A DNA stretch of 64,000 nt from positions 169,887 through 233,886 of the IMG/VR virus record IMGVR_UViG_3300042515_001753, one strand, 5' to 3'. Made by a program: the position numbers and the translations under genes. This document shows positions 16,903-30,398 of the stretch, piece by piece (position 1 is the first letter of the stretch; each line of letters begins with the position of its first letter). The notes below the pieces were generated by a model that was not told the DNA's origin, ran no database searches, and worked only from the letters and a program-made list of their open reading frames with translations.

Positions 16903-16931
16903 ATTATAACTCAAAGAGTCCTAATAGTCAA
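16903..16931 (-). promoter_or_regulatory. Sigma70-type promoter TTGACT-17bp-TATAAT directly upstream of tRNA-Leu
   Basis: Plus strand ATTATA 16903-16908 and AGTCAA 16926-16931. Confidence 0.75.
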
Positions 16932-16932
16932 G

Positions 16933-17006
16933 TGCTCATTGTGGGAATCTAACCCACCTTCGGCGCTTTATGAGAACGCTGCATTCAAACAGATTGCTAA
17001 ATGAGC
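16933..17006 (-). tRNA. tRNA with CAU anticodon (Met, or Ile2 if lysidine-modified); non-canonical D and T loops
   Basis: GCTCATT/AATGAGC acceptor stem, GCGTT-CTCATAA-AGCGC anticodon arm, GTGGG-TTAGATT-CCCAC T arm. Confidence 0.8.
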
Positions 17007-17035
17007 ATTCGCTATTCGCAAATGACGAATAGCAA

Positions 17036-17123
17036 TACGAGTGCCTGGATTCGAACCAGGTCAAAGCCGCTAATCTGGCGGAAAGGCGTTATAAGTGCCC
17101 TCTGACTACCAAGTCTCACTCGC
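17036..17123 (-). tRNA. tRNA-Ile(UAU)-like, with long variable arm and very small D arm
   Basis: GCGAGTG/CACTCGT acceptor stem, GACT-TGGT-AGTC D hairpin, CT-TAT-AA loop, CCGC..GCGG variable stem, CCTGG-TTCGAAT-CCAGG T arm. Confidence 0.7.
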
Positions 17124-17171
17124 ATAAAAGTTGCCTTGAAGCAACATATAAGACCTATAAGTTGCCTTGAC

Positions 17172-17354
17172 TCAACAACCTTCTTCGTGGTCGGTGTGTA
17201 TTCGTATGAGGTCGTCTGCTTCTTTGTATTGTCTATAAGGAATCATCATAGCATCTCCGTGTTCGCTAGTAACAATAAAAGACTCTCCATTTTCCACTCT
17301 TTCTAGTAGATTATCAAAGTCTTCTTGAAATTCTTCTACCGTAAACTTTTCCAT
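17172..17354 (-). CDS. Phd/YefM antitoxin-like small protein
   Basis: MEKFTVEEFQEDFDNLLERVENGESFIVT..G.AMMIP resembles the Phd/YefM N-terminal pattern. Confidence 0.6.
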   Translation of the reverse strand: MEKFTVEEFQEDFDNLLERVENGESFIVTSEHGDAMMIPYRQYKEADDLIRIHTDHEEGC

Positions 17355-17357
17355 TTA

Positions 17358-17543
17358 TCAAAGAGGATTTGAGTATGCAAGACAATCATCACTTACCTGA
17401 GCACGAACCACTTCCAGTACATTCATAAACTGGTCTGGAGTTTCACAATTCACAACTCGTTCACCACCCTCACTCGAATACAGATAGAACTTACGAGCAA
17501 GCGTATCGACAACACAACGGGTCAGGGTCTCTTCGGCAGGCAT
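17358..17543 (-). CDS. Small hypothetical protein
   Basis: 61-aa ORF directly after a consensus promoter. Confidence 0.7.
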   Translation of the reverse strand: MPAEETLTRCVVDTLARKFYLYSSEGGERVVNCETPDQFMNVLEVVRAQVSDDCLAYSNPL

Positions 17544-17569
17544 CAGGCGTTTCGTTTGATTACCTAGGT

Positions 17570-17598
17570 ATTATAGGGCATCTGGGGGCAGGTGTCAA
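17570..17598 (-). promoter_or_regulatory. Consensus sigma70 promoter TTGACA-17bp-TATAAT driving the small-gene/tRNA operon
   Basis: Plus strand ATTATA 17570-17575 and TGTCAA 17593-17598. Confidence 0.85.
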
Positions 17599-17653
17599 GG
17601 GGTTTTGGGCACCAAATTGAGTTATAATACATAGTATAGAAAAAATAATAAGT

Positions 17654-18232
17654 ATGAGTGATTTTGTAAAAAAAGGTTGGTATTATCTTCCAAATATTAT
17701 TACCAAAGAAGAAGCAATACAAATCAAATATCAAAACTTATGTGGTGCTATAAATGATTTAGGTTCTTTAGAGGGACATTGGGACCCAGAAAGAGGTAGA
17801 GTTTTGACTTGTTATGCTCCACCTTCTTGCACCTTTGTAATGAAGAGAATTCAACCAGTTCTTGAAGATTTACTAGGTGAAGAACTCATTCCAACATATT
17901 GGTTCTCCACAACTTATCATAATGGTGGATGGATGAACTGCCATACTGATCGTCCTTCTTGTGAAGTATCAATCACTATGAATATCTGTGGTGATGCTTC
18001 TTGGCCAATTAAAATCAAAGACCTGACTGGTAAAACAATTAAAGCAGTTACACCAGTTGGAGATGGAGTTGCATACTTAGGAACACTTGTAGAGCACTGG
18101 AGAAGTCCTCTGAGAACTCACAATAATGATCGTTTTATGCAACTATTCCTACACTTTGTACGAAAGAATGGTCAGTACGTTGATTATGCTTATGATAAAA
18201 ATGAAAAATGCTATCAGTTACTCAACAGATAA
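17654..18232 (+). CDS. 2OG-Fe(II) oxygenase-like protein
   Basis: CHTDRPSCEVSIT ... GDGVAYLG...EHWR ... QLFLHFV; related to 59926-60579. Confidence 0.8.
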   Translation: MSDFVKKGWYYLPNIITKEEAIQIKYQNLCGAINDLGSLEGHWDPERGRVLTCYAPPSCTFVMKRIQPVLEDLLGEELIPTYWFSTTYHNGGWMNCHTDRPSCEVSITMNICGDASWPIKIKDLTGKTIKAVTPVGDGVAYLGTLVEHWRSPLRTHNNDRFMQLFLHFVRKNGQYVDYAYDKNEKCYQLLNR

Positions 18233-18748
18233 GGGGTCATTAATCATAGGAATCTGAGAAACTTCAGACCACCTATCATAAAGTCTTAAAACTTCTGAAT
18301 TGTCTTTTACAATTAGTGGTAATGGCGGAAATCCTTTGGGAAATGTTTGTGAAGAAGGAAGGTCTCTTAGTTCTTGTCTCCAGGTTTTAAAGTCAACGTC
18401 TAGTGATATTTCTTGTTCGGTTCCTTTAATTACAATCCAATCTGTAGTTGCAAGAATTTCATCACGAATTATACGAATTAAATCATATCTTTTCTTTTCT
18501 TCTCTTGAATCATAGAGATTTATTTCATTATCCCATTCTGATTGAGTCAATATCCAGAGTCCTTCTGTTGGATTTACAACAGTCTCATCAGGACAAGTAG
18601 ATAGTGAATATGGAACATTATTTTCATCTGTTAAGTCATAAATTCTTTCTAAACCTTCAATATTTGGAATCATATATCCTTGTGCTGGTGTTATCGCATA
18701 TTGACCAGTATCACGATTTATCCAATAGTGCTTAAGAAGTTTAGACAT
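18218..18748 (-). CDS. Tail fibre assembly chaperone-like protein
   Basis: C-terminal IRDEILATTDW...WRQELRDLP pattern typical of phage fibre-assembly proteins. Confidence 0.6.
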   Translation of the reverse strand: MSKLLKHYWINRDTGQYAITPAQGYMIPNIEGLERIYDLTDENNVPYSLSTCPDETVVNPTEGLWILTQSEWDNEINLYDSREEKKRYDLIRIIRDEILATTDWIVIKGTEQEISLDVDFKTWRQELRDLPSSQTFPKGFPPLPLIVKDNSEVLRLYDRWSEVSQIPMINDPLSVE

Positions 18749-18752
18749 ATCT

Positions 18753-19415
18753 CTAGTAAACTTTTATTCCATATTTATCTTCAAGTTCTTTATCTTGCTC
18801 TGCTTTGGTTTTAATTCCTTGTATAGTCATCCAATTTACCATAGCATAACGAGTTCCTGAAATGACTGGTTCTACCTGATGAAGATAATATTGTGTTGAT
18901 GGAAAAGCAATAAGAAGCCCTGGTTCTGGACGTACTCTAATTCTTAAATCTGGAAATACAAAGTCTCCTCCCTCAAACTCATCATTTAGAAAAAGAACCG
19001 TAGATAAATCTCGTTCAACAGATTTTTTCCAAATGATAGTTCCATCTGGATTTTTCCACTGTGCTACTGCATCATAATGAGGTTTATAGTGACCTCCTTG
19101 TTCATAGACAAGAAGTTGTGGAAGTTCACTATCTCTTATCTTGAAATCATAAAAAGGATTAATAACGTGATGAACTATATTATCATAAAGTTCCTTAATC
19201 TGTGGCAATATTTCTATTATATCTGCAGATTTTACATCTCTGGAAGACCTATCAACTTTTCCGGGATTATCATCAAAAGTTTTATTTGCTTTATCTGGAT
19301 CAAATACACCCATTTGTTCTTGTGAAGAATTATTTGCGTGATTGATTAGGAAATCAATTGCATCTGATGTAAGAACTTTTGGTTGTATTAAAATATTTGC
19401 AAGAGTGTCATTCAT
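18753..19415 (-). CDS. 2OG-Fe(II) oxygenase (prolyl-4-hydroxylase/PKHD-like)
   Basis: YKPHYD ... LSTVLFLNDEFEGGDFVF ... LHQVEPV.SGTRY. Confidence 0.88.
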   Translation of the reverse strand: MNDTLANILIQPKVLTSDAIDFLINHANNSSQEQMGVFDPDKANKTFDDNPGKVDRSSRDVKSADIIEILPQIKELYDNIVHHVINPFYDFKIRDSELPQLLVYEQGGHYKPHYDAVAQWKNPDGTIIWKKSVERDLSTVLFLNDEFEGGDFVFPDLRIRVRPEPGLLIAFPSTQYYLHQVEPVISGTRYAMVNWMTIQGIKTKAEQDKELEDKYGIKVY

Positions 19416-19439
19416 ATAAAGATGATATAGTTGTTGTAT

Positions 19440-20462
19440 TTAGACTGATTGTCCTCCTGAAGTTGCTGCTATATTCTGTTTTGCTTGAGATAATTTAGGT
19501 ATTGGTACAAATACTGTTTCTGTAGAAAAATCTAAGCGATCAATTGTAGAAACATTAGTAAGAGGAGCGTCATTCCCACCACCAAAGTAACCATAAGAAA
19601 AATTTGAGGTTGCTGTTATATTAGATCTTCCCTGAGATAACTTAGGAGTTGGGGTTGTTACGATGTCTGTAGAGAAATCTAAACGATTTATGGTAGAAAT
19701 TAGAGTCGGTGCAACATAACCACCACCAAAATAAGCATAAGAAGCACTTGAGGTTGCTGCTAAAGTGGAATTTGTTGTAGATAACTTAGGCGTTGGAGTT
19801 GTTACAGATTCTGTAGAGAAATCTAATCGGTCTATGGTGGAAACATTATTAGTAAGAACAAAACCACCACCAAAGTAACCATAAAAACTACTTGAAGTTG
19901 CTGCTATACTCTGTTTTGCTTGAGATAACTTAGGCGTTGGAGTTGTGACTGTTTCTGTAGAAAAATGTAAACGGTCTATTGTGGATCTACGAATAACAGG
20001 AGGAAAAGTAAGTCCACCACCAAAGTAACCATAAAAACTACTTGAAGTTGCTGATAAACTGGTTCTGGCCGCAGTTAACTTAGGAGTTGGAGTTGTTACA
20101 GATTCTGTAGAGAAGTCCAGACGGTCTATGGTACTGAAAAGCAGGGGTCCAGCGCCGCCTCCACCAAAGTAACCGTAAAAACTACTTGAGGTTGCTGCTA
20201 AATTGGATTTTGCTACAGATAACTTTGGTGTTGGAGTTGTTATGATTTCTGTTGAAAACTCTAAACGGTCTATGGTACTGTTGGTGGGCAGCTGGCCACC
20301 ACCAAAATATCCAATACGAGCCTGCTCAGGCCAAGAAGCAAATTTATTATTTTGCTCTACGTTTTCTACTTGTTTTTCATAGACATCTCTTAGTCCAAAG
20401 ACATCTCCTACAAAATTTCCATATCTAGAAGGATTACCACCACTACCTCGAATGACTGGCAT
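19440..20462 (-). CDS. Kelch-like beta-propeller repeat protein (paralog 1)
   Basis: About six repeats of YGYFGGG...STIDRLDFSTE.VTTPTPKLS. Confidence 0.75.
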   Translation of the reverse strand: MPVIRGSGGNPSRYGNFVGDVFGLRDVYEKQVENVEQNNKFASWPEQARIGYFGGGQLPTNSTIDRLEFSTEIITTPTPKLSVAKSNLAATSSSFYGYFGGGGAGPLLFSTIDRLDFSTESVTTPTPKLTAARTSLSATSSSFYGYFGGGLTFPPVIRRSTIDRLHFSTETVTTPTPKLSQAKQSIAATSSSFYGYFGGGFVLTNNVSTIDRLDFSTESVTTPTPKLSTTNSTLAATSSASYAYFGGGYVAPTLISTINRLDFSTDIVTTPTPKLSQGRSNITATSNFSYGYFGGGNDAPLTNVSTIDRLDFSTETVFVPIPKLSQAKQNIAATSGGQSV

Positions 20463-20468
20463 TTTACG

Positions 20469-21317
20469 TTACTTCTTAAGCTCTGAATTAAATAACGAAC
20501 TTGTAATTTGTTTTGCTTCTTTTTGCTCAACACCAGAAAGAAGTTGCCGACTCATTCCTGTAATTTCTTCAATACCAGCAGCAACATTTTCTTGAAGTTT
20601 ATTTAAGAAATCAAGAGGATCAGTTGGATCTCCAAATGTTCCCTTTGTTCTATTTAAATCATCATCCATTACTGTGGGGGCACTTGCACGTCTCATAGAA
20701 CGAATATTACCAGCATTTACGCCAGTTTTTGCTTGAAGTAAATCATCTAATGCCTGATTAGACAATCTACGTTCCCAATAAACTGGTTGATCTTCAATAA
20801 ATTGTTCTCTTGTAATTAATTTTCCACCATTCAATTCAATCAGACGATTAATCAGTTTATCAAAAAACTCAAGTTCGTGTGCATAACACTTGAAGTTCTT
20901 AATTAAACCTTGAAGCATTCTATTAAAGTTAAATTCCTCAATATCATACCAACATAACTCTTCACCACCTTCACGAGTCTTCCACCAAATTGGTTGTGTC
21001 TTATCCTTCCCATCCCACTTATAATGAAATTCCCTTGCTTGTTTCTTTGCGTCAATAATTTGTTGAAGTAGTCCTTCTGCAGAACTTTTACGATTCACAA
21101 GTGCTGATTGAAATGCAGATGGAATTGTAAAGTTATCGTGAACAATAAATTTTTCAATTTGAAACTCTGAACGAGTATGTGATAATTCAGTTTCACTCTC
21201 ATTCCAACGATCTACTTCGTTGAGAACCTTAAACATAAACTCATTATTATCATCTAATACTTCTTTAGGAGTTGCAAGAGCAATTACCTCATAGTTATTT
21301 TGCATAGTGTTGTTCAT
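20469..21317 (-). CDS. Hypothetical protein
   Basis: 282-aa helical-looking ORF inside the island. Confidence 0.7.
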   Translation of the reverse strand: MNNTMQNNYEVIALATPKEVLDDNNEFMFKVLNEVDRWNESETELSHTRSEFQIEKFIVHDNFTIPSAFQSALVNRKSSAEGLLQQIIDAKKQAREFHYKWDGKDKTQPIWWKTREGGEELCWYDIEEFNFNRMLQGLIKNFKCYAHELEFFDKLINRLIELNGGKLITREQFIEDQPVYWERRLSNQALDDLLQAKTGVNAGNIRSMRRASAPTVMDDDLNRTKGTFGDPTDPLDFLNKLQENVAAGIEEITGMSRQLLSGVEQKEAKQITSSLFNSELKK

Positions 21318-21322
21318 TTATT

Positions 21323-22876
21323 TTATCTTTTGGTATTTAGATTGTTTTCTACACAGAAGAATCCAGTCGTTTCATTATACTTTTGAACTTTTGTAATCTT
21401 AAAGTTTTTATTTTCTAAAAATTCAAACAAATCTTTAGATGTTTTATCACTCAAATCATTATGATACTCACCTACAATCTTTTCAACTTTAAATAATAAC
21501 TTTGATTTCATTAAAATTTCATATTCAGATCCTTCGGCATCTACTTTAAGTAAAGAAACCTTAGGAAAATTAATCAAAATATCATCAAGTCCTACAGTTT
21601 TGACTTTAGTTTTAAATTCACTTTTCTGATAAAAAGAGTGCATTCCAGTATTACTTCCAGGAATTATAGTAAGTTCTTTCTCTCTTTTCCTATCTAATAC
21701 TGCAAGATTATATGCCTGAAAACACTTATAATCTTTCAAATTATTCATAAGTTCTTCAAAATTCTTTGGTTCTGGTTCAAATGAATGAATTTGTTTGCAA
21801 CCTTTGTCCATACACAGTTGAGTGAAGTATCCTTTATGTGCTCCAATATCAATTACAACATCTTCTGGTGAAAAACTTTCTACCTGATATTCATTCTTTT
21901 GGTAGACTTGTTCATAAATCCAATTATCACCACAAACAAATTTTTGATTTGAGAACTGACCAATCAATTCTTTCCATACAGATGCCGACTTATTCCAATC
22001 ATAAGTTTCTCTTGTGAGTTTTGATAGGTCTTTTGTTGCATTATAAAAAGTCTCTGGTTCTTTATCAAAAAACTCAAAGCATCTTGAAACTTCTTCTGCA
22101 AACTCATTTATAAACTGAGATGATGGTTTCCATCCTGTTGGTGTATTCTCACCAGTCATAGAAATATATTTTCCTTTACCAAATGAAACTTCTGGAAGTG
22201 CTCCAATATTACTTGTAATTGGATAACAACCACAAGACATAGCCTCTGCTAATGAAAGACAGAAGGTTTCTTCCCATACATTTGGATGAACAAAGAATGC
22301 AGCATCCTGAATATGAGATACCAATTCTTCTCTTTCAATACAAGGTGAGTAAAGAACATTTGGAAGTGTCTTTAATTCTTGAATTGCTTCCAAGAACTCC
22401 TCTGTTTCTTGTTGAGTACTTCCAGCATTCTCATACAAAGACATAGAGGAGAAGACTTTAAGATGAGCATCTGGATGATTTTTAATCACTTGTTTCCAGA
22501 TTTTTGGAAGGGGTGTAATTCCTTTATGAGGAGCAGAAAAGAAGATTGCGGTCTTTGATTTGGGTTTTGATGATGGGACAAATATTGAATCTAATCCATA
22601 ATAAATCACCTTCAGTTTTTCTTCTGGTGCTCTTTTGTATTTGATATATTTCTGCCTTTCCCATTCCGAAAGACATACAATCGCACTTAACTGATTTGCG
22701 ACTGCAGGTAAATTTGCGTGTATTGGTTGGTCACAATTATCGTGTGCCCAGAGTATCTTAATTGGTTTTGATGATTCTAGAAGTTCTTGCGATGACCTTG
22801 CAATATGAACTTCTTGTGGAATATTGAGATGTTGTGAAAGATAATAAAAAGAACTTTCAGTTGCTCCAGACTTCAT
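21323..22876 (-). CDS. GT-B (GT4-like) glycosyltransferase fused to an FkbM-family methyltransferase
   Basis: WEETFCLSLAEAMSCGCYPITSNIGALPE (GT4 signature), then VIDIGAHKG..FEP..LLKVDAEGSE (FkbM). Start MKSGATE at 22876 is preferred over the track start 22960, which overlaps the upstream gene. Confidence 0.85.
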   Translation of the reverse strand: MKSGATESSFYYLSQHLNIPQEVHIARSSQELLESSKPIKILWAHDNCDQPIHANLPAVANQLSAIVCLSEWERQKYIKYKRAPEEKLKVIYYGLDSIFVPSSKPKSKTAIFFSAPHKGITPLPKIWKQVIKNHPDAHLKVFSSMSLYENAGSTQQETEEFLEAIQELKTLPNVLYSPCIEREELVSHIQDAAFFVHPNVWEETFCLSLAEAMSCGCYPITSNIGALPEVSFGKGKYISMTGENTPTGWKPSSQFINEFAEEVSRCFEFFDKEPETFYNATKDLSKLTRETYDWNKSASVWKELIGQFSNQKFVCGDNWIYEQVYQKNEYQVESFSPEDVVIDIGAHKGYFTQLCMDKGCKQIHSFEPEPKNFEELMNNLKDYKCFQAYNLAVLDRKREKELTIIPGSNTGMHSFYQKSEFKTKVKTVGLDDILINFPKVSLLKVDAEGSEYEILMKSKLLFKVEKIVGEYHNDLSDKTSKDLFEFLENKNFKITKVQKYNETTGFFCVENNLNTKR

Positions 22877-22916
22877 AAAGAATAATGTAGTTGTTGTATT
22901 TAGATTGATTAGGTAC

Positions 22917-23942
22917 TCAAGATATATCCGTACCTCCTCCTTGAGAACCATTAGCGACACCTGTTGATTGAGCTCCTGAGGTTGATCCTATGTTAGATTT
23001 TGATTGTGCTAATACAGTTGCTAGAGTTAATCTAGTTTCTGTAACGAAATCTATACGGTCAATAGCGTTTGTTCGAACCAGAGGTGCTGTTTGCCCACCG
23101 GCAAAATAACCATAAGAAAAGTTTGAGGTTACTGCCATACCAGATTTTCCTATAGATAAGGTAAGAGTTGGAGATGATGTTACGGTTTCAGTAGAAAAAT
23201 CTAAACGATCTATAGTAGAAAGATAAGTAAGAGGAGGATTGAAATATCCACCACCAAAGTAACCATAAGAACGACTTGAGGTTGCCGATAAAGGAAATTT
23301 TGATTGAGTTAATTTAGGAGTTGGTGTAGAAAAAGATTCCGATGATAGATCCAAACGGTCTATGGTGGAAATACCAAGAGCCGTAACACGACCACCAGCA
23401 AAGTAACCATAATAATTAGTTGCGGTTGCTCCTGCACCAGATTTTGCTATAGGTAGATTATTAACCGAAGATGCTACGGTTTCTGTGGAAAACTCTAAAC
23501 GGTCTACGGTGGAACGCAAAGTACCCCCAAGAGCAGTACTTCCACCACCACCAAAATATCCATAATAACTACCTGAGATTGCTGCCGTATTATTTCTTGC
23601 TTGGGTTAGCACAGGACTTGGAGTTGTTCTGATTTCTGTGAAGAAATCTATACGTTCTATTGTAGAATAATTAGTACTAATAGTATAACCACCACCAAAA
23701 TATCCATATAACACACTTGAGACTCCTGACATAAATCCTCTTGTTGCAGGCAAATTAGAACCCGGAAGTGTTATAGTTTCATTTGAAAAATTTATACGTT
23801 CTATTGTAGAGACATAGGGGATAATACCACCCACATAATATCCTCTAACAGAACCCTCAGGCCAAAAACTAAATTTTGCATCATTAAAGGATACATTCTT
23901 GACTTGTTCTGCTCTAGCTTCTTGAAGTGAGAATACTGACAT
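22917..23942 (-). CDS. Kelch-like beta-propeller repeat protein (paralog 2)
   Basis: Repeats of YGYFGGG...STIDRLDFSTE. Start MSVFSL at 23942 overlaps the sulfotransferase stop (TAATG); the ORF track extends it to 23984. Confidence 0.75.
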   Translation of the reverse strand: MSVFSLQEARAEQVKNVSFNDAKFSFWPEGSVRGYYVGGIIPYVSTIERINFSNETITLPGSNLPATRGFMSGVSSVLYGYFGGGYTISTNYSTIERIDFFTEIRTTPSPVLTQARNNTAAISGSYYGYFGGGGSTALGGTLRSTVDRLEFSTETVASSVNNLPIAKSGAGATATNYYGYFAGGRVTALGISTIDRLDLSSESFSTPTPKLTQSKFPLSATSSRSYGYFGGGYFNPPLTYLSTIDRLDFSTETVTSSPTLTLSIGKSGMAVTSNFSYGYFAGGQTAPLVRTNAIDRIDFVTETRLTLATVLAQSKSNIGSTSGAQSTGVANGSQGGGTDIS

Positions 23943-24769
23943 TACAGACCAAAGATAGGATATTTTGAAGTTTCCTTTTTCCAAAACTCCATATGATCGT
24001 ATTTATTCATTACATACTCAGAAAGGTACTTTGAGTTATCACGATATATCTTCTCTACTCTATTTCTTACAGTATGCATATTCTCTAAACGATAAACCTC
24101 ATCGTTCTCATTTGCCTTTGGAGTTACATTCTCAAAGATATGAGAGTAACTTGGTAGATTTAGAAACTCATAAATCCGATTGAGTTCTCTTTGTGGTTCT
24201 TGAACTAGATTATCATACTCAATAAGTAACAAGTTGTTCTCATATCCCTTACGAAAGGCTTCTTTAAGTGCGTGATAAGATTGCCCTATGATACCTTGTG
24301 AAGACATTAGATAATCGCAACGATTATTATCTGTAATTTCTATTTGATTTTTGAGTAATACTTCGTCAATAAAGGAGATTGTTTTTGATTTGCGAATCAG
24401 TAGCATAAAGGAAGACAAAATATCTTGAATAGACCTTACAGGACAGATAATCTTTGGATCTGGTGTAATGTAATCTTGAATATGTTGAATTTGATTGACC
24501 CAACCTCTTGACTTATCAATAATAATATTCTGAGAAGTATGAAAGTAATAGTTATCAGGTATGGATGATAGAACTCTATGTGCTCCTTCTGGATTTGGTG
24601 TTGCCTTATATTGCTCTGAATTGTGTAAAAGGTACTCTTCGGTATAGTGAATGGTATCCAGAAGTGGAGAGTTTGTGGATGCGTGTATCTCTGGGTTCTG
24701 ATTTAAAAGAGCAGTCAAAAGTGTGGAACCTGAACGTGGAAGTCCAGACATAAAATAAAAGGTTCTCAT
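23942..24769 (-). CDS. Sulfotransferase (P-loop, PAPS-dependent)
   Basis: MSGLPRSGSTLL 5'-PSB motif; IIDKS; KIICPVRSIQDILSS 3'-PB region; LLIEYDNLVQEP. Confidence 0.88.
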   Translation of the reverse strand: MRTFYFMSGLPRSGSTLLTALLNQNPEIHASTNSPLLDTIHYTEEYLLHNSEQYKATPNPEGAHRVLSSIPDNYYFHTSQNIIIDKSRGWVNQIQHIQDYITPDPKIICPVRSIQDILSSFMLLIRKSKTISFIDEVLLKNQIEITDNNRCDYLMSSQGIIGQSYHALKEAFRKGYENNLLLIEYDNLVQEPQRELNRIYEFLNLPSYSHIFENVTPKANENDEVYRLENMHTVRNRVEKIYRDNSKYLSEYVMNKYDHMEFWKKETSKYPIFGL

Positions 24770-24772
24770 AAA

Positions 24773-25708
24773 TTATACTGATTGCCCTCCATAAACAGCA
24801 GCTGCTAAATTTCTTACAGCAAGTAAATTGGCACCTGTTACTGCAGTCTCAGCAGAAAAATCAAATTTTTGTATGGTGGTTGGAGTTCCGGCATAAAAAC
24901 CATAACTAAAGCTTGATACAGCAGCTCTACCACCGAATGCAGATGAAGCAACGGCAGGAAGTGTTGTTAATGTCTCATTTGCGAATTGTAAACGTTGAAG
25001 AAATCCACTATAACCATCATTAACATATCCATTAGCAGCACTTGCAAATGATGTGTTTTGGGGTGCTCCTACTGGTAAATTTGCTACAAATTTTACAGAT
25101 TCTGTTGAATAATCTATACGATCAATTGAACTTATAGGATTTGGATCGCTTACTCCTGCATTAAAATATCCAAAGTTTGTACTTGAAAAAGCGGAGAACT
25201 TATATCTATTTCTATTGATTGGTGTACTGAGGGATTGAACAGTTTCGGTTGAAAAGTTTAATCTGGTTATGTTAGATGAACCAGCATTTGGTGCAGTTGG
25301 ACTAGGAGCTCCTCCAGCAAAATATCCATAAGAACCTTTATTAGTTATTCCGGCAAGCCAACCTCTTGCTGCTGGTAAAACTGCACTTAATACTGATGTG
25401 GCATTTGTTGCATAATCAATCTTATTTATTTCTGTTACTGTAGGTGCTCCACCACCAAAATATCCAAAAAATGGAGCACTTATTGTCCCCTGAGCTGCTC
25501 TTCCTGTCGGTAAATTTCCTACAGATGTTACGGTTTCTGTTGAAAACTCTAATCTATCTATACTAGATAATACTGTAGATGGAGGAGTAAGTCCTCCTCC
25601 CCAATAACCCTCAATAGCACCTTCAGGCCAACTAGTAAAGTTCTTATCTTTTACATTCTGAAACTGTCTTTTATAAACCTTGTTAAGACTAAAGATTCCA
25701 GTAGCCAT
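24773..25708 (-). CDS. Kelch-like beta-propeller repeat protein (paralog 3, diverged)
   Basis: GYFGGG / GYFAGG and IDRLEFSTETV repeats; shared N-terminal motif. Confidence 0.7.
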   Translation of the reverse strand: MATGIFSLNKVYKRQFQNVKDKNFTSWPEGAIEGYWGGGLTPPSTVLSSIDRLEFSTETVTSVGNLPTGRAAQGTISAPFFGYFGGGAPTVTEINKIDYATNATSVLSAVLPAARGWLAGITNKGSYGYFAGGAPSPTAPNAGSSNITRLNFSTETVQSLSTPINRNRYKFSAFSSTNFGYFNAGVSDPNPISSIDRIDYSTESVKFVANLPVGAPQNTSFASAANGYVNDGYSGFLQRLQFANETLTTLPAVASSAFGGRAAVSSFSYGFYAGTPTTIQKFDFSAETAVTGANLLAVRNLAAAVYGGQSV

Positions 25709-25714
25709 TTTTAT

Positions 25715-26383
25715 TTACTCTTCCTGAAAGACATGAGATCCAACATGACTAAGATGAATAGTTGTATCTAACCAAGACTTATATCCAACACTTGATGCTC
25801 TCTCAAAGAATGAAAAATCTTCCGGTAGAAAGTGCATATCTTTTTTCATTTCAAGAAAATAATGATAAGAATTATTATACTCTTTTTCTGTTACTGGATA
25901 GTTTGAGTTATTTAGAGTGGGGTAATACTTCAATTCTTCTCCATAGTGATTTTGAATGCTCTGAAAAACTTTTCTACGAATACAACAAAATCCAAAACCA
26001 ATATTTTCTATCTGAACTAGACTATCTTCTGCAACTGGTGGAGATGATATATTGTAGTTATATCTCAAAGGAATACTCTTCATCGGATATGCTCCACATA
26101 TAATCTCCTTATCAGATAAAATAAGATTCAATGCATCTTCTGATGCAAATCCAACATCAGCATCAATAAATAAAATCTTTTCATACTCAGTATTATTCAT
26201 AAAAAAATTAGCAATTCTAGATCTACCCTTTGTGATAAGACTTTCATTAGCAATAGTCAAAAATCCATGATCTATTGATTTAGTTCTCAAATCCTTCCCA
26301 AGATTAAACAGTCCCTTTACAGTTTTATCACTAACCATTCCACCATAACAAGGCATTGCAATTAAAACTGAGTTCATAATCAA
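25715..26383 (-). CDS. GT-A fold glycosyltransferase-like protein
   Basis: LIAMPCYGG ... ESLITKGRSRI ... ILFIDADV (DxD) ... GFGFCCI ... PEDFSF ... LSHVG. Confidence 0.75.
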   Translation of the reverse strand: MIMNSVLIAMPCYGGMVSDKTVKGLFNLGKDLRTKSIDHGFLTIANESLITKGRSRIANFFMNNTEYEKILFIDADVGFASEDALNLILSDKEIICGAYPMKSIPLRYNYNISSPPVAEDSLVQIENIGFGFCCIRRKVFQSIQNHYGEELKYYPTLNNSNYPVTEKEYNNSYHYFLEMKKDMHFLPEDFSFFERASSVGYKSWLDTTIHLSHVGSHVFQEE

Positions 26384-26399
26384 ATACTTTATTGAATTA

Positions 26400-29300
26400 T
26401 TATACTATGTATTTACCGGAAACACAAACTGTTAAACTGTTAGTATAACTCGAAAATGCTCTGATCGTTTCTAAAATACCAAGTCTTGTTGGTCTTTCTA
26501 AAATTTCAACAATACTGTTTTTCGGAATAGTGAGATTACGAACTAGAAATCCAACTCTAACTCCAGAACTATTGAAGATAGAAATACTAGCATTAATATC
26601 TATGTTTAGATTATAATTACACAGACGAATTGATTGAATAACTGAAGGATATGTTGTAGATGTAAAAACTGTTTGAGTACCACTTAATATAATAGCACCA
26701 GTTCCAAAGAAATTAGTATCAGTTTTAGTTGAAAAAGTGATAAATGTACTTAGACCATTATTGATACCAATAGAAGAAGTGGTTGTACCATTTAGTGCCT
26801 GGAATCTCAAAATATCTGATGGTCCTGCAACCATTGGTTGTTGTATTAGTTCTACGGATCCTTCATAAGGAACAATTAATCTATTTGCTATAGGGACATT
26901 AGAACCACCACTAAAATCATGTCTAGCTGCTAAGTATAAGTCATCGGTGTAAATATTTGCAACGTAAATAGACTCAATTATATACCTACTACCAACAGTT
27001 GATGGAAATGTATAAATTGCTGTTGGTCCAGTAGTAATATCAGTTCCAGAACCTGCAGTTACATCAACAAATTCCCTGTTTGTAAGGTCAGTATTAAAAG
27101 CTCCAGATCCTCCACCACCGGCACCGCCGGAACTTCCTTGAACACCTTGATTACTTAAACCTTGAGTACCTTGAAGACCCTGAGTACCTTGACCGGCATT
27201 TTGTCCCGCTATTCCCTGAACACCTTGAGTTCCTTGGCGACCCTGAAGACCCTGAAGACCCTGAGTACCTTGACCGGCATTTTGTCCCGCTATTCCCTGA
27301 ACACCTTGAGTACCTTGAAGACCCTGAGTACCTTGACCGGCATTTTGTCCCGCTATTCCCTGAACACCTTGAGTTCCTTGGCGACCCTGAGTACCTTGAC
27401 CGGCATTTTGTCCCGCTATTCCCTGAACACCTTGAGGTCCTTGAGTACCTTGAAGACCCTGAGTACCTTGACCGGCATTTTGTCCCGCTATTCCCTGAAC
27501 ACCTTGAGTACCTTGAGTACCTTGAAGACCCTGAAGACCCTGAGTACCTTGACCGGCAGTTTGTCCCGCTATTCCCTGAACACCTTGAGTTCCTTGGCGA
27601 CCCTGAAGACCTTGAAGACCTTGAAGACCCTGAGTACCTTGACCGGCATTTGCACCTGAAGTTCCTTGAGTACCCTGACCTTGAGGTCCTTGAGTACCTT
27701 GAAGACCCTGAGTACCTTGACCGGCATTTTGTCCCGCTATTCCCTGAACACCTTGAGTACCTTGAGTACCTTGAAGACCCTGAGTACCTTGACCGGCATT
27801 TTGTCCCGCTATTCCCTGAAGACCCTGAGTTCCTTGGCGACCCTGAAGACCCTGAAGACCCTGAGTACCTTGACCGGCATTTTGTCCCGCTATTCCCTGA
27901 ACACCTTGAGTACCTTGAGTACCTTGAAGACCCTGAGTACCTTGAGTACCTTGACCGGCATTTTGTCCCGCTATTCCCTGAAGACCCTGAGTTCCTTGGC
28001 GACCCTGAAGACCCTGAAGACCCTGAGTGCCTTGAGTTCCTTGAGTACCCTGTGTACCTTGAGTGCCTTGAAGACCTTGAAGACCCTGAGTACCTTGACC
28101 GGCATTTTGTCCCGCTATTCCCTGAAGACCCTGAGTTCCTTGGCGACCCTGAAGACCCTGAAGACCCTGAGTGCCTTGAGTTCCTTGAGTACCCTGTGTA
28201 CCCTGTGTACCTTGAGTGCCTTGAAGACCTTGAAGACCCTGAGTACCTTGACCGGCATTTTGTCCCGCTATTCCCTGAAGACCCTGAGTTCCTTGGCGAC
28301 CCTGAAGACCCTGAAGACCCTGAGTGCCTTGAGTTCCTTGAGTACCCTGTGTACCCTGTGTACCTTGAGTGCCTTGAAGACCTTGTGAACCAGAAGTACC
28401 TTGAGTGCCTTGGCGACCTTGAAGACCCTGAGCACCCTGAAGACCCTGAGTGCCTTGAAGACCTTGAAGACCTTGAAGACCTTGAAGACCTTGAAGACCT
28501 TGAAGACCTTGAAGACCTTGAAGACCCTGAGTACCTTGAGTACCCTGAGTGCCTTGGAGACCTTGGGTTCCTTGAGTACCTGTACCTCCCGTTACTCCAG
28601 CAGTACCTTGAAGACCCTGAGTACCTTGAGTGCCTTGAAGACCCTGGGTTCCTTGAGTGCCTTGAAGACCTTGAGTACCTTGAAGACCCTGGTTCCCCTG
28701 AGTTCCTTGCGTACCTTGAGTACCTTGAGTTCCTTGGCGACCCTGAAGACCTTGAAGACCCTGAGTACCTTGACGACCTTGAGTTCCTTGGAGACCTTGA
28801 GTTCCTTGAAGACCTTGATTACCTTGAAGACCCTGAGTACCTTGAAGACCTTGAAGACCGGCGGCAAAGGAAGGAGTCCAACTTACGCCTATGCCAGTAG
28901 AAATCAATACAGATCCGGCAACACCTACATTATTATAAATGTCTCTAAGAGTTGAATCTAGTTCAATTCCCCCAGTAAAAATAGAATCTCCACCAACATT
29001 TAGATTTTTTTCAATTCCAACTCCACCTTCTGTAATAATTGATCCAGTATTTTTATCTGTAGATTCTGTTGGGTCGTTTACATAAATTGCATCATTAATT
29101 TGAGTTGTTCCAGCACTTGAGTCTAAAATCAGATTTCCAACATTTGTACTGACCGTGTTTGTATCAAGTTTAATATTATCAAATGTACCTACTCCAGTAA
29201 CATTTAGATTATTAACATTAACTTGAGAACTAAATGTGGAAACACCAGATACATTTAATCGATTGAGTGTGGTTGATTGGTAAACCTGAAGATTTTGAGT

Positions 29301-30398
29301 TGTGGTAAGACCAGTAACTCCTAAATCACTATTAATATTAACTTTTTGTAAGAGTGTTGAAACTCCAGTTACATATAAATTTGTTATATCAAAACCACCG
29401 ACAAATTTTAATGCTGTTACAATACCCGTAAAGAAAGCACTTGTTCCGGTAACAAATCCAACTGTAGTAATTCCAGTAACTTGAAGATTTCTAGTTGTTG
29501 TAGTTCCAGTTACATTAAGATTATCAATCGTGGTTCCACCCTTAAAACTAGATATTCCTAAAACATCTAGTAAAACCTTTGGTTGAGTGCTTCCAACTCC
29601 AACTCTACTATTAAGGTCATCAAATACAAAATTAGGGGCACCATCAACTAATCCAACATTATTATTATATTGAATATTTGTATAAGTTCCACCAGCTCCT
29701 GATCTAATTGTTGATTGATTAGTCCAATTTAATCCACCAAAGGCATTTTTAACTAGTATATCCTGAGTTACTCCAGGTTGATTATTAGAATCATAAATTG
29801 TTCCTGTAAGTCTAATATCTCCTTGAACGTGTAATTCTTGTGTGGGATCTGTGGTTCCTATACCAACTAATCCATCTGGTTTTACCGTAAAAATTGATCC
29901 ACCAGTTCCAACATTTAATCCGTTACCAATTGTTAAAATGCCAACAGAACTATTGAAAACTAAACTTGAAGATGTTGCAAAATCATTATTTTCTTTGAAT
30001 AAAACTCCCCCATTATTTCCAGGAGGAGATACTGTTATAGTAGCAGCAATTCCAGGAGATCCATCAAAATTTAAGTAACCCTGAACCGCAATTGCACTTC
30101 CTTTGAAATTGAGTTGAGAGATGCTACTAATACCTCCAGCAGGTGTTATAATACCTTCTTCATAGACACTAATTGCTCCAGGAATCAATCCTCCACCAAC
30201 AGGAATCCAATATCTTTCTCCCGGTCTTTCCAGAAGAGATATAACCTGATATTGAGTTCCTACCGGTATTAATTCTCCAGGTACTTCAGGATCTCCAAGA
30301 TTTGGTTCTGCTTGATCTAAGTCTAGATATCTATATCTATCCGTAGAAAGTCCAGATTGGGGAGTTCTTTTAACTCTATTACTAAGATATCTTGGCAT
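26400..30398 (-). CDS. Collagen-like tail fibre protein
   Basis: 1332 aa; fibre-type N-terminus (VGIGTT motifs), a long uninterrupted-looking Gly-X-Gln tract and a globular C-terminus. Confidence 0.85.
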   Translation of the reverse strand: MPRYLSNRVKRTPQSGLSTDRYRYLDLDQAEPNLGDPEVPGELIPVGTQYQVISLLERPGERYWIPVGGGLIPGAISVYEEGIITPAGGISSISQLNFKGSAIAVQGYLNFDGSPGIAATITVSPPGNNGGVLFKENNDFATSSSLVFNSSVGILTIGNGLNVGTGGSIFTVKPDGLVGIGTTDPTQELHVQGDIRLTGTIYDSNNQPGVTQDILVKNAFGGLNWTNQSTIRSGAGGTYTNIQYNNNVGLVDGAPNFVFDDLNSRVGVGSTQPKVLLDVLGISSFKGGTTIDNLNVTGTTTTRNLQVTGITTVGFVTGTSAFFTGIVTALKFVGGFDITNLYVTGVSTLLQKVNINSDLGVTGLTTTQNLQVYQSTTLNRLNVSGVSTFSSQVNVNNLNVTGVGTFDNIKLDTNTVSTNVGNLILDSSAGTTQINDAIYVNDPTESTDKNTGSIITEGGVGIEKNLNVGGDSIFTGGIELDSTLRDIYNNVGVAGSVLISTGIGVSWTPSFAAGLQGLQGTQGLQGNQGLQGTQGLQGTQGRQGTQGLQGLQGRQGTQGTQGTQGTQGNQGLQGTQGLQGTQGTQGLQGTQGTQGLQGTAGVTGGTGTQGTQGLQGTQGTQGTQGLQGLQGLQGLQGLQGLQGLQGLQGTQGLQGAQGLQGRQGTQGTSGSQGLQGTQGTQGTQGTQGTQGTQGLQGLQGRQGTQGLQGIAGQNAGQGTQGLQGLQGTQGTQGTQGTQGTQGTQGLQGLQGRQGTQGLQGIAGQNAGQGTQGLQGLQGTQGTQGTQGTQGTQGLQGLQGRQGTQGLQGIAGQNAGQGTQGTQGLQGTQGTQGVQGIAGQNAGQGTQGLQGLQGRQGTQGLQGIAGQNAGQGTQGLQGTQGTQGVQGIAGQNAGQGTQGLQGTQGPQGQGTQGTSGANAGQGTQGLQGLQGLQGRQGTQGVQGIAGQTAGQGTQGLQGLQGTQGTQGVQGIAGQNAGQGTQGLQGTQGPQGVQGIAGQNAGQGTQGRQGTQGVQGIAGQNAGQGTQGLQGTQGVQGIAGQNAGQGTQGLQGLQGRQGTQGVQGIAGQNAGQGTQGLQGTQGLSNQGVQGSSGGAGGGGSGAFNTDLTNREFVDVTAGSGTDITTGPTAIYTFPSTVGSRYIIESIYVANIYTDDLYLAARHDFSGGSNVPIANRLIVPYEGSVELIQQPMVAGPSDILRFQALNGTTTSSIGINNGLSTFITFSTKTDTNFFGTGAIILSGTQTVFTSTTYPSVIQSIRLCNYNLNIDINASISIFNSSGVRVGFLVRNLTIPKNSIVEILERPTRLGILETIRAFSSYTNSLTVCVSGKYIV
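27136..28858 (-). repeat. Collagen-coding 9-bp tandem repeat with higher-order QGIAGQNAG blocks
   Basis: Plus-strand units such as ccttgaaga and ccttgagta; recurrent block accggcattttgtcccgctattccctga. Confidence 0.95.

What the first reader, a model, noticed from the sequence alone, without database searches (positions are those of the whole stretch)
18753..26383. Island in which repeat proteins alternate with modifying enzymes, next to a collagen fibre
Transcription order after the collagen-like fibre: GT-A, propeller, sulfotransferase, propeller, GT4-FkbM, hypothetical, propeller, prolyl-hydroxylase-like, fibre chaperone. Genes are tightly coupled, with 1-40 nt gaps or overlaps. The propellers are very Ser/Thr-rich (TTPTP, ATSSS). 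Inference: a phage-encoded pathway that glycosylates, methylates, sulfates and hydroxylates its own virion proteins, or remodels the host surface for superinfection exclusion. A sulfated phage glycan would be unusual.
Basis: partly seen in the sequence, partly recalled or inferred. Interest (0 to 1): 0.65.

Follow-up and report, generated by a model that had tools for sequence, protein, structure and literature searches.

The report
Propeller-and-enzyme module in phage tail fibres
A lake-water cyanophage carries, inside its tail-fibre genes, three Kelch propeller proteins interleaved with sugar-, methyl-, sulfate- and hydroxyl-adding enzymes, an arrangement that recurs in related phages and may mean the phage chemically decorates its own fibre proteins, which nobody has tested.

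Summary
On the minus strand, after a 1332-aa collagen-like fibre, lie GT-A glycosyltransferase, Kelch propeller K1, sulfotransferase, K2, GT4-FkbM, a 282-aa helical protein, K3, a P4H-family 2OG dioxygenase and a tail-fibre chaperone. Gaps run from -1 to 40 nt.

The module recurs in more than 12 related loci. These include the cultured phage S-SKS1 and a more distant Kyanoviridae virus. Three Kelch orthologue lines, the 282-aa protein, the dioxygenase and usually the chaperone are constant. The transferases come and go: one relative has none.

Each transferase keeps the same downstream partner: GT-A then K1, sulfotransferase then K2, GT4 then 282-aa protein then K3. The 282-aa protein is fused to GT4 in other phages. 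Freshwater phage S-SRM01 has an analogous module built on RCC1 propellers.

The TTPTP motif is confined to K3. Ser/Thr richness matches ordinary fibre proteins.

Best reading (about 0.4): the propellers are fast-evolving fibre-associated virion proteins with a conserved N-terminal docking segment, optionally modified in the cytoplasm by the adjacent enzymes. Virion location and any modification are inferred, not shown. I rate it a new variant of a known kind, interest about 0.6.

The parts
26400..30398 (-). Collagen-like tail fibre, 1332 aa. It has a non-collagen N-terminal part, about 175 G-X-Y triplets (X = T/L, Y = Q, no Pro) and a C-terminal globular domain of about 230 aa that is conserved in relatives.
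   Evidence: PF01391 E 2.2e-68. Tail-fibre PHROGs. Triplet statistics. The C-terminal domain is 42-54% identical in L006 and L010-L014.
25715..26383 (-). GT-A-fold glycosyltransferase, 222 aa, phrog_1574. It always lies directly upstream of K1.
   Evidence: Profile hit to STIV A197 GT-A (PDB 2c0n) at E 2.2e-5. Invariant PCYGG, FID(A/S)D, EDFSFFERA and HVGSH motifs. phrog_1574 at 6e-31. 70-75% identity in relatives.
24773..25708 (-). Kelch propeller protein K1, 311 aa, six repeats. The N-terminus follows the pattern 'MA.G.F.L.KVYK.Q.QNV...NF.SWPE'.
   Evidence: PF13418 E 2.3e-6. phrog_19111 at 4.9e-51. Orthologue N-termini.
23942..24769 (-). PAPS-type sulfotransferase, 275 aa. Its stop codon overlaps the K2 start (TAATG).
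   Evidence: PF13469 2.7e-18 and PF00685 7e-16. The only solved relatives by sequence are protein-tyrosine sulfotransferases at E 7e-5. 942 close metagenomic relatives. Overlap shown.
22917..23942 (-). Kelch propeller protein K2, about 341 aa from the ATG at 23942. The ORF list gives a TTG at 23984.
   Evidence: phrog_19111 at 7e-76. Start inferred from orthologue N-termini.
21323..22876 (-). Two-domain enzyme of about 517 aa from the ATG at 22876: a GT4 (GT-B) glycosyltransferase followed by an FkbM-family SAM methyltransferase.
   Evidence: PF00534 1e-12 and PF05050 5.5e-16. TIGR01444 scores 91.5 bits against a 37.7-bit cut-off. EX7E motif at 231-239. Relatives align from residue 29.
20469..21317 (-). 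282-aa helical protein with a long coiled-coil hairpin and a beta-hairpin. It always lies directly upstream of K3 and is fused to the C-terminus of GT4 in other phages.
   Evidence: AF2 pLDDT 85.8. GT4 fusions P0242, P0245, P0248 and P0258. An 81-member viral GT4 cluster is the best shape match. The AG-345-L05 631-aa fusion matches by hhalign at E 8e-48. 485 close relatives.
19440..20462 (-). Kelch propeller protein K3, 340 aa. It has six near-identical repeats of about 48 aa, a disordered N-terminus and a helix at residues 24-36.
   Evidence: AF2 model with pTM 0.83. Foldseek PDB E 1.5e-20. DNA tandem repeat of period 144. More than 251 relatives.
18753..19415 (-). 2OG-Fe(II) dioxygenase of the prolyl-4-hydroxylase / PKHD family, 220 aa, with H113-x-D115, H179 and R189.
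   Evidence: PF13640 8.5e-16. PDB relatives are a PKHD hydroxylase and B. anthracis P4H at E about 1e-5. Residues shown.
18218..18748 (-). Tail-fibre assembly chaperone, 176 aa. It closes the minus-strand run.
   Evidence: PF16778 at 33 bits against a 26.6-bit cut-off. phrog_4912 'tail fiber assembly' at 2.7e-23.
17654..18232 (+). Convergent 192-aa gene that overlaps the chaperone's 3' end by 15 nt. It is present at this position in every relative and is 78-82% identical. Function unknown; the database label 'ferrochelatase' is unverified.
   Evidence: phrog_2954 at 6e-55. No Pfam, NCBIfam or PDB match. Synteny.

Best explanation
The island is an accessory part of the tail-fibre module of a T4-like cyanomyovirus.

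Constant core. The core is three paralogous Kelch beta-propeller proteins (K1, K2, K3), a 282-aa helical protein, a P4H-family 2OG dioxygenase and, in most relatives, a tail-fibre chaperone.

Proposed role of the propellers (inferred). They are late-made virion proteins that dock onto the fibre or baseplate apparatus. Docking would use a conserved N-terminal segment of about 30 residues ('VFGL..VY..QV.NV...NF.SWPE'). The fast-evolving propeller would be exposed to the outside, probably as a multivalent glycan-binding or adhesive head.

Proposed role of the enzymes (inferred). Soluble cytoplasmic enzymes are slotted in front of particular propellers: GT-A before K1, a PAPS sulfotransferase before K2, and GT4(-FkbM) plus the helical protein before K3. 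I propose that they modify the propeller that follows them, or the fibre that carries it, before assembly. The steps would be O-glycosylation on the Ser/Thr-rich surface, O-methylation of the sugar, sulfation of sugar or tyrosine, and hydroxylation by the dioxygenase. Sugar donors would come from the phage's own nucleotide-sugar cluster. PAPS would come from the host.

Status of each step. Shown: gene content, folds, conservation, enzyme-propeller adjacency and the GT4 fusion. Inferred: virion location, enzyme targets and the chemistry.
For: 1. Setting. The island lies among tail-fibre and baseplate genes on one strand. It shows no internal promoter or terminator signal above chance, and gaps run from -1 to 40 nt.

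2. Conservation. The same module occurs in S-SKS1, in IMG/VR loci L006-L014, and in L022-L024.

3. Evolutionary rates. The pattern is that of receptor-binding parts. Propellers are 38-50% identical between orthologues, the chaperone 34-56% and the fibre tip 42-54%. The enzymes and the 282-aa protein are 61-82% identical. The propellers' N-terminal 30-36 residues are 63-74% identical.

4. Lectin fusions. Some family members carry a C-terminal ConA-like lectin domain.

5. Virion precedent. A Kelch propeller, CBB_552, was found by mass spectrometry in phage CBB virions (PMC5259590). Kelch proteins of phiKZ-like phages are annotated as virion structural proteins.

6. Fixed pairs. GT-A then K1, sulfotransferase then K2 (TAATG overlap), and GT4 then 282-aa protein then K3 stay together even where the order is K1, K3, K2 in L010.

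7. Recurrence in other lineages. In AG-345-L05 a sulfotransferase (42% identical) sits before a 968-aa Kelch-family protein, followed by GT-A and a GT4-282 fusion. S-SRM01 has three RCC1 propellers with a 2OG oxygenase, a homologous sulfotransferase (34% identical) and a GT2-methyltransferase fusion next to the long-tail-fibre distal subunit.

8. Protein-modifying affinities. The sulfotransferase's only solved relatives by sequence are protein-tyrosine sulfotransferases. The dioxygenase's are prolyl and PKHD hydroxylases.

9. Soluble enzymes. No island protein has a transmembrane segment.

10. Sugar supply. The genome encodes GDP-mannose 4,6-dehydratase, three more epimerase/dehydratases, GT6, GT11 and GT25.
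Against: - No proteomic, transcript or structural datum places the propellers in the virion or shows any modification. No RNA run holds the locus.
- The transferases are dispensable. L024 has none, and L011 and S-SKS1 lack both glycosyltransferases. The propellers therefore work without them, and the enzymes could be unrelated cargo in a hypervariable region.
- Ser/Thr content rises only weakly with glycosyltransferase presence: 18-21% without against 21-27% with, from few loci.
- The sulfotransferase similarity to TPST is confined to the PAPS-binding motifs, so it says little about the acceptor.
- The phage has five PF13640 oxygenases, so this one need not be specific to the module.
- The N-terminal docking motif matches nothing else in the genome, so no partner is identified.
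- The fold of the 282-aa protein gave only background-level matches.
Confidence: 0.4

Rival explanations
1. The propellers are virion adhesins, but the transferases and the dioxygenase are independent cargo genes ('morons') in a hypervariable fibre region. They would act on host envelope glycans, such as lipopolysaccharide or extracellular polysaccharide, for example to block superinfection or change the dying cell's surface. They would not act on phage proteins.
For: - The transferases are gained and lost freely while the propellers stay.
- The genome has a separate LPS-type glycan cluster with GT25, GT11, GT6 and Gmd.
- In L022, GT11 and GT25-like genes sit just beside the island.
- A distant phage sulfotransferase, in S-SCSM1, lies among replication genes.
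- Published work regards the role of phage sulfotransferases as unclear (PMC10580990).
Against: - Each enzyme keeps the same propeller partner across rearrangements and across three lineages.
- The sulfotransferase stop overlaps the K2 start.
- The analogous S-SRM01 module re-creates the same enzyme set around a different propeller family.
- Placement inside a tightly packed structural run with no internal signals fits late co-expression, which is a poor time to remodel the host surface.
Confidence: 0.25
2. The propellers are not virion parts. They would be cytoplasmic substrate adaptors or scaffolds, as Kelch domains are in eukaryotic E3 ligases. Each would present a common substrate, for example the collagen-like fibre, to its partner enzyme, forming a modification assembly line.
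For: - One-to-one adjacency of enzyme and propeller.
- Kelch domains are classic protein-binding modules; the closest structures are KLHL and Keap1.
- The 282-aa protein fused to GT4 could be a further adaptor.
Against: - All three propellers persist where no transferase exists (L024).
- The propellers evolve fast while the enzymes are conserved, the opposite of what a dedicated enzyme adaptor would show.
- Blade number varies from 6 to about 12 to about 18.
- Some relatives add lectin domains.
- The upstream fibre is not always collagen-like.
Confidence: 0.12
3. The association has no functional meaning. Propeller genes duplicated in a recombination-prone fibre region, and unrelated enzyme genes accumulated between them by chance and hitch-hiking.
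For: Fibre regions of T4-like cyanophages are mosaic. An HNH endonuclease lies nearby at 15858-16571. Enzyme content differs between loci.
Against: - The pairs GT-A/K1, sulfotransferase/K2 and GT4/282-aa/K3 are retained in more than 8 loci at 60-80% protein identity, and in a lineage with only 42% identical sulfotransferase.
- GT4 and the 282-aa protein are fused in an 81-member cluster.
- There is a convergent RCC1 version.
Confidence: 0.1
4. The enzymes, and perhaps the propellers, make or bind a small secondary metabolite or modified peptide. This was proposed for the tandem dioxygenase arrays of cyanophages.
For: Iyer et al. 2010 (PMC2938197) link cyanophage 2OG-dioxygenase arrays, sulfotransferases and methyltransferases to metabolite synthesis. 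This genome has such an array at window 3103-4828.
Against: There is no peptide synthetase, precursor peptide or transporter in the island. The island sits between fibre and chaperone genes. Glycosyltransferases of GT-A and GT4 type, together with a nucleotide-sugar cluster, point to glycans.
Confidence: 0.05

Closest known systems
Virion glycosylation in mycobacteriophages (Freeman et al. 2023, Cell Host Microbe; PMC10527164, seen in the reference list read)
   Same: Phage-encoded glycosyltransferases sit in or next to structural genes and are proposed or shown to glycosylate the phage's own virion proteins in the cytoplasm.
   Different: That system has no propeller proteins, sulfotransferase, methyltransferase fusion or dioxygenase. 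From my own knowledge of the paper, its targets are capsid and tail-tube proteins. The host is an actinobacterium. Modification is demonstrated there and only inferred here.
Giant-virus capsid and fibril glycosylation clusters: PBCV-1 A064R (GT-GT-methyltransferase), Mimivirus L230 (lysyl hydroxylase + glycosyltransferase acting on viral collagen-like proteins), and Moumouvirus, Cotonvirus and Tupanvirus clusters with sulfate-metabolism genes (review PMC9614988)
   Same: The virus encodes nucleotide-sugar synthesis, several GTs, a GT-methyltransferase fusion, a hydroxylase next to collagen-like proteins and predicted sulfation. All are aimed at surface fibrils of the particle.
   Different: Those are eukaryotic giant viruses with unrelated enzymes. 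L230 hydroxylates lysine in G-X-Y repeats, whereas this collagen has Q at Y and almost no Lys or Pro. There is no propeller triad. Sulfation is also only predicted there.
Bacterial operons predicted by Iyer, Abhiman, de Souza and Aravind 2010 (PMC2938197): 2OG dioxygenases + sulfotransferases (+ PAPS synthetase, methyltransferase) with collagen-like or phage tail-collar proteins as proposed substrates
   Same: The same logic applies: hydroxylate, then sulfate a co-encoded fibrous surface protein. A collagen-like or tail-fibre-like protein lies in the neighbourhood.
   Different: [quoted passage not shown] Here the phage encodes no PAPS synthesis. Both cases are predictions.
Kelch propeller proteins of jumbo phages, e.g. 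CBB_552 of Pectobacterium phage CBB (PMC5259590) and phiKZ-like 'virion structural proteins'
   Same: These are six-bladed Kelch propellers encoded by myoviruses. At least one was detected by mass spectrometry in mature virions.
   Different: They are sequence-unrelated beyond the fold (12-22% identity). They are not arranged as a conserved triad and not interleaved with modifying enzymes. Their function is also unknown.
Receptor-binding protein Gp45 of Staphylococcus phage phi11 (PMC4901313, listed)
   Same: A beta-propeller serves as the host-recognition platform of a phage tail device.
   Different: From my own knowledge of the paper it is a five-bladed, non-Kelch propeller that is part of a single trimeric RBP. 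It has no associated modifying enzymes.
RCC1-propeller module of Synechococcus phage S-SRM01 (NC_070963, gp335-gp349)
   Same: After the long-tail-fibre distal subunit come three beta-propeller proteins, a 2OG oxygenase, a homologous sulfotransferase (34% identical, E 2e-49), a GT-methyltransferase fusion and a sugar epimerase.
   Different: The propellers are seven-bladed RCC1 type, not Kelch. The GT is GT2 and the methyltransferase is Methyltransf_24/TylF-like, not GT4-FkbM. The 282-aa protein was not looked for there. The module is unstudied.

Membership tests
Kelch-repeat beta-propeller | Tandem repeats of 44-56 residues with a GG doublet and conserved aromatic and Arg positions | tested here: met
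   K3 has six repeats of about 48 aa following the pattern 'YGYFGGG...STIDRLDFS.ET...L...R'. Pfam Kelch_4 scores 27.9 bits against a 21.6-bit cut-off for K1. PF24681 occurs in many relatives. The family profile hits designed and natural Kelch domains at 7e-13 and 5e-6.
Kelch-repeat beta-propeller | Six blades, each a four-stranded antiparallel sheet, closed into a ring | tested here: met
   The AF2 model has pLDDT 85.8 and pTM 0.83. Foldseek gives E 1.5e-20, TM 0.90-0.94 and rmsd about 2 A to KLHL20, KLHL12, Keap1 and SAKe6. This is a predicted structure, not a solved one.
GT-A fold glycosyltransferase | Sequence relationship to a solved GT-A enzyme, and a DxD metal/nucleotide-sugar motif | tested here: met
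   The profile of 7 orthologues hits STIV A197 (2c0n) at E 2.2e-5 across the DxD region. D74-A-D76 is invariant. The fold itself was not predicted here, and activity is not testable with these tools.
PAPS-dependent sulfotransferase (PF13469/PF00685) | Family HMM match over the whole domain, and a 5'-phosphosulfate-binding loop | tested here: met
   PF13469 scores 67.5 bits (cut-off 27) over residues 6-206. PF00685 scores 58.8 bits. The 'PRSGST' loop at residues 11-16 aligns with the TPST loop.
Protein-tyrosine sulfotransferase (TPST/RaxST type) | Specific similarity beyond the PAPS-binding motifs, plus a peptide-binding groove | tested here: inconclusive
   TPST1 and TPST2 are the only PDB sequence matches (E 7e-5). 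The aligned stretches are only residues 5-40 and 170-209, which are the cofactor motifs. The acceptor type remains open.
GT4 (GT-B, retaining) glycosyltransferase | Glycos_transf_1 domain with an EX7E motif | tested here: met
   PF00534 scores 48.3 bits (cut-off 26.4) and PF13692 scores 39.6 bits. The E231-x7-E239 motif is present.
FkbM-family SAM methyltransferase | Match to the family model above the curated cut-off | tested here: met
   TIGR01444 scores 91.5 bits against 37.7. PF05050 scores 59.6 bits against 22.7. The substrate (sugar O-methylation) is inferred from the GT fusion.
Collagen prolyl 4-hydroxylase | 2OG-Fe(II) oxygenase of the P4H family with a His-x-Asp...His triad and a 2OG-binding Arg | tested here: met
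   PF13640 scores 59.2 bits against 27. H113-x-D115, H179 and R189 are present. B. anthracis P4H is among the best PDB matches at E 8e-6.
Collagen prolyl 4-hydroxylase | A proline-containing X-Pro-Gly collagen substrate | tested here: not met
   The neighbouring collagen-like fibre has no Pro at X or Y in 175 triplets. PKHD-type hydroxylases score as well as P4H. I therefore file it only as a 'P4H/PKHD-family dioxygenase' with unknown substrate.
Phage tail-fibre assembly chaperone (PF16778) | Family match above the cut-off, and a position at the 3' end of a fibre gene set | tested here: met
   It scores 33 bits against 26.6. phrog_4912 matches at 2.7e-23. It is the last gene of the minus-strand run in most relatives. 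Which protein it assists is unknown.
Phage-encoded virion glycosylation system | Modified virion protein demonstrated, with the modification dependent on the phage enzyme | not testable with these tools
   This needs virion proteomics and glycoproteomics and enzyme knock-outs. Only genomic association is shown here.

The most novel reading that the evidence does not exclude
Cyanomyoviruses decorate their own beta-propeller fibre proteins with a phage-built, methylated and sulfated glycan, plus hydroxylation. This would be the first sulfated virion glycoprotein in a bacteriophage. Each modifying enzyme would be genetically paired with its own propeller substrate. The system would have arisen twice, on Kelch propellers in S-SKS1-like phages and on RCC1 propellers in S-SRM01.
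Probability: 0.25. Interest if true: 0.8.

Novelty: new variant of a known kind. Interest (0 to 1): 0.6.

Why it matters
Tail fibres decide which cells a cyanophage can infect, and picocyanobacteria are major primary producers. If the module works as proposed, fibre-tip proteins would carry phage-made sulfated and methylated glycans. That would add a new layer, post-translational chemistry, to host recognition, particle stability and resistance to proteases or grazers.

It would also give a function to the phage sulfotransferases, whose role is described as unclear (PMC10580990).

The family is common. There are 485 close relatives of the 282-aa protein, 942 of the sulfotransferase and more than 251 of the propeller in metagenomes.

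Two cultured phages, S-SKS1 on Synechococcus WH7803 and S-SRM01, carry versions of the module. The idea is therefore directly testable.

Even if the enzymes turn out to act on the host, the conserved propeller triad with its shared docking segment is an undescribed tail-fibre component.

Tried and rejected
- Complex prediction of K3 with the 282-aa protein gave no answer (score 0.20, mark 0.32). It is not evidence either way.
- Fold searches for the 282-aa protein gave little. Foldseek against the PDB found nothing at E <= 0.001. The best shape match was prefoldin beta at VIA Z 7.7, which is background level for helical hairpins. 'Prefoldin-like chaperone' is kept only as a lead.
- The language-model look-alikes pointed to portal proteins at low feature overlap. 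I rejected this lead.
- Prolyl hydroxylation of the collagen fibre is rejected, because the triplets contain no Pro.
- TPTPK as a conserved hydroxylation or glycosylation site is rejected. It is present in K3 only, and the family consensus differs.
- The T4 late-promoter motif TATAAATA does not occur inside the island. Sigma-70-like promoter and terminator counts equal chance. The transcription-unit structure is therefore inferred from spacing only.
- There is no phage APS kinase.
- A search of the whole genome for other proteins with the propellers' N-terminal motif found none.
- The 192-aa convergent gene has no Pfam, NCBIfam or PDB match and no similarity to the PF13759 oxygenases of relatives. 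The 'ferrochelatase' label remains unverified.
- The C-terminal domain of the collagen fibre has no PDB sequence match.
- Sequencing runs gave only DNA holders and no RNA. Laying four runs gave short low-depth contigs. Joints between paralogous propeller genes had short flanks. I do not use them as evidence for deletions.
- Literature searches for S-SKS1 or S-SRM01 virion proteomics found nothing.

Full report
**What is in the window.** The window is the last 64 kb of a 233,886-bp IMG/VR virus record. By DNA similarity the record is a T4-like cyanomyovirus; its relatives are S-SRM01, P-SSM2/5 and S-SKS1. The exact stretch is held by 'lake water metagenome' runs from many studies, and none of them is RNA.

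The finding lies in a long minus-strand run of tail genes. Downstream is a 1853-aa tail fibre at 9934-15495. Upstream are a 976-aa fibre and baseplate-hub genes.

I corrected two starts by comparison with orthologues. The gaps are then 16, 6, 3, -1, 40, 5, 6, 24 and 4 nt. The sulfotransferase stop overlaps the next propeller's start as TAATG. No T4-type late promoter lies inside the island. Generic promoter and terminator hits equal chance.

**Identity of the parts.**
- Propellers. All three belong to one family (phrog_19111) and are 39-53% identical to each other. The AlphaFold model of K3 (pLDDT 85.8) is a six-bladed Kelch propeller. It has a disordered N-terminus and one short helix. It superposes on KLHL20, KLHL12 and Keap1 at TM about 0.9.
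- GT-A. The 222-aa protein matches the solved viral GT-A enzyme STIV A197 by profile (E 2.2e-5) and has an invariant DxD motif.
- Sulfotransferase. It is a clear PF13469/PF00685 member. Its only solved sequence relatives are protein-tyrosine sulfotransferases, but the similarity covers only the cofactor motifs.
- GT4-FkbM. Both halves are well supported.
- Dioxygenase. It belongs to the P4H/PKHD family and has an intact iron triad.
- Chaperone. It passes the PF16778 cut-off.
- Solubility. None of these proteins has a membrane segment.

**The 'hypothetical' gene.** The 282-aa protein has 485 close metagenomic relatives. An exhaustive search found more distant ones. Several of these are fusions with a GT4 glycosyltransferase at the N-terminus. 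The best shape match in the ESM Atlas is an 81-member viral cluster that is 100% GT4. A 631-aa protein of marine virus AG-345-L05 is such a fusion (hhalign E 8e-48).

Its model is a long helical hairpin tipped by a beta-hairpin. Matches to prefoldin are at background level. I conclude that it works with the GT4 enzyme. What it does there is unknown.

**Conservation and variation.** The module occurs in S-SKS1, in nine further IMG/VR loci and in contigs L020-L024.
- Constant parts: three propeller genes, the 282-aa gene, the dioxygenase, the convergent 192-aa gene and usually the chaperone. L023 has four propeller genes and no chaperone call.
- Three orthologue lines. K1, K2 and K3 can be told apart by their N-termini across phages.
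- Optional transferases. L006/L014 lack the sulfotransferase. L011 and S-SKS1 lack GT-A and GT4-FkbM. L013 and L023 have GT4 without FkbM. L024 has no transferase at all.
- Fixed neighbours. When present, GT-A precedes K1, the sulfotransferase precedes K2, and GT4 plus the 282-aa protein precede K3. In L010 the order is K1, K3, K2 and the sulfotransferase moved together with K2.
- Blade number. It is six here and in L022, about twelve in most relatives and about eighteen in AG-345-L05.

**Two further lineages.** In AG-345-L05 (Kyanoviridae) the order is as follows: a tailspike-like protein, a 955-aa Kelch-family protein and a sulfotransferase (42% identical) come first. Then follow a 968-aa Kelch-family protein (hhalign E 2e-21), a phrog_1574 GT-A and the GT4-282 fusion.

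In freshwater phage S-SRM01 the long-tail-fibre distal subunit is followed by three genuine RCC1 propellers. These are interleaved with a DUF4376 protein, a 2OG oxygenase, a homologous sulfotransferase (34% identical), a GT2-methyltransferase fusion and a sugar epimerase.

The same enzyme set recurs around a different propeller family. This is the strongest argument that propellers and enzymes are functionally linked.

**What the propellers probably are.**
- Rates. They, the chaperone and the fibre tip evolve fastest (about 30-55% identity between relatives). The enzymes stay at 61-82%.
- Docking segment. Within the propeller proteins the first 30-36 residues are far better conserved (63-74%) than the blades (38-50%). 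This is the usual pattern of a conserved anchor plus a variable host-facing domain.
- Lectin fusions. Some relatives add a ConA-like lectin domain.
- Precedent. Kelch propellers have been found in phage particles: CBB_552 by mass spectrometry (PMC5259590), with annotations in phiKZ-like phages.

I therefore take them to be fibre-associated virion proteins. This is inference.

**What the enzymes probably do.** They are soluble, tightly packed with late structural genes and paired with specific propellers. The phage also has a 17-kb glycan cluster elsewhere in the genome. It carries Gmd, three more epimerase/dehydratases, GT6, GT11, GT25 and methyltransferases. It has no APS kinase, so PAPS must come from the host.

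The simplest reading is cytoplasmic modification of the propellers or their fibre before assembly.

Against it: the transferases are dispensable, the Ser/Thr trend is weak, and no modification has been observed. The TTPTP motif is a K3 peculiarity.

**Comparison with known systems.** The nearest demonstrated analogue is virion glycosylation in mycobacteriophages. The nearest in enzyme repertoire are giant-virus fibril glycosylation clusters, including a GT-GT-methyltransferase (A064R), a hydroxylase-GT acting on viral collagen (L230) and predicted sulfation (PMC9614988). Iyer et al. predicted dioxygenase-sulfotransferase operons acting on collagen-like or tail-collar proteins in bacteria (PMC2938197). 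None of these has a propeller triad with paired enzymes. In the S-SKS1 record the propeller and 282-aa genes are annotated only as hypothetical proteins. The literature searches made here found no description of the module.

**Limits.** Everything about location, timing, targets and chemistry is inferred from sequence, predicted structure and gene neighbourhood. The single complex prediction gave no verdict. Several metagenomic contigs are fragmentary or frameshifted. L006 and L014 are probably the same phage type, so the count of independent loci is somewhat lower than the count of loci.

Noticed in passing
Outside the window: G000:C1 about 12,800-30,200 (locus L025): A separate glycan-biosynthesis cluster of about 17 kb on one strand. 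It carries GT25, GT11, GT6, GDP-mannose 4,6-dehydratase (510 bits), three more NAD-dependent epimerase/dehydratases, HtrL/YibB, two SAM methyltransferases and a kinase-like gene. In relative L022, GT11 and GT25-like genes sit right beside the propeller island.
   Followed up: partly
window 3103-4828 and 60605-61231: Three tandem PF13640 2OG-Fe(II) oxygenase genes (3103-3594, 3585-4175, 4172-4828) and a fourth at 60605-61231. All five PF13640 genes of the genome lie in this window. This resembles the cyanophage dioxygenase arrays discussed by Iyer et al. 2010.
   Followed up: no
window 17654-18232 (+): A convergent 192-aa gene overlaps the chaperone's end by 15 nt. It is 78-82% identical in every relative locus compared. 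PHROGs and the S-SKS1 record call it 'ferrochelatase', but no Pfam, NCBIfam or PDB match supports any function.
   Followed up: partly
Locus L026 (Synechococcus phage S-SRM01, record 222,328-236,287): An analogous fibre-side module built on three RCC1 propellers, with a 2OG oxygenase, a sulfotransferase, a GT2-methyltransferase fusion and an epimerase. The RCC1 repeats are also Thr-rich ('NNTTT.RSTPVTT').
   Followed up: partly
Locus L001 (S-SKS1, record about 201,100-203,700 and the record ends): In the deposited S-SKS1 record the dioxygenase is split into two overlapping ORFs. A stretch of about 1.3 kb with strong propeller matches carries no annotated gene. One propeller gene runs across the ends of the linear record (SWZG_00001 is partial). 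These may be sequencing or annotation problems, or real decay.
   Followed up: no
window 15858-16571 (-): An HNH homing-type endonuclease gene (phrog_10822, 5e-56) lies between the large fibre gene and the island region. It is a possible driver of local mosaicism.
   Followed up: no
window 27162-28955 (+): Long ORFs (165-416 aa) lie on the strand opposite the collagen repeats. They are almost certainly artefacts of the G-X-Y repeat composition, not genes.
   Followed up: no
window 19440-24769 in runs X10-X13: The phage occurs in lake-water metagenomes of many studies, whereas several of the family's relatives come from marine samples (TARA, a Pacific single-cell virus). In run X13 some contigs join K3-like to K2-like sequence, skipping 3.1-4.7 kb. 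The flanks are short and may come from other phages.
   Followed up: partly
window 26400-27095 (-), C-terminal about 230 aa of the collagen-like fibre: A globular C-terminal domain follows the collagen helix and is conserved at 42-54% in all relatives, even where the shaft is not collagen-like. It has no PDB sequence match. A C1q/BclA-like head is a guess and was not tested.
   Followed up: partly
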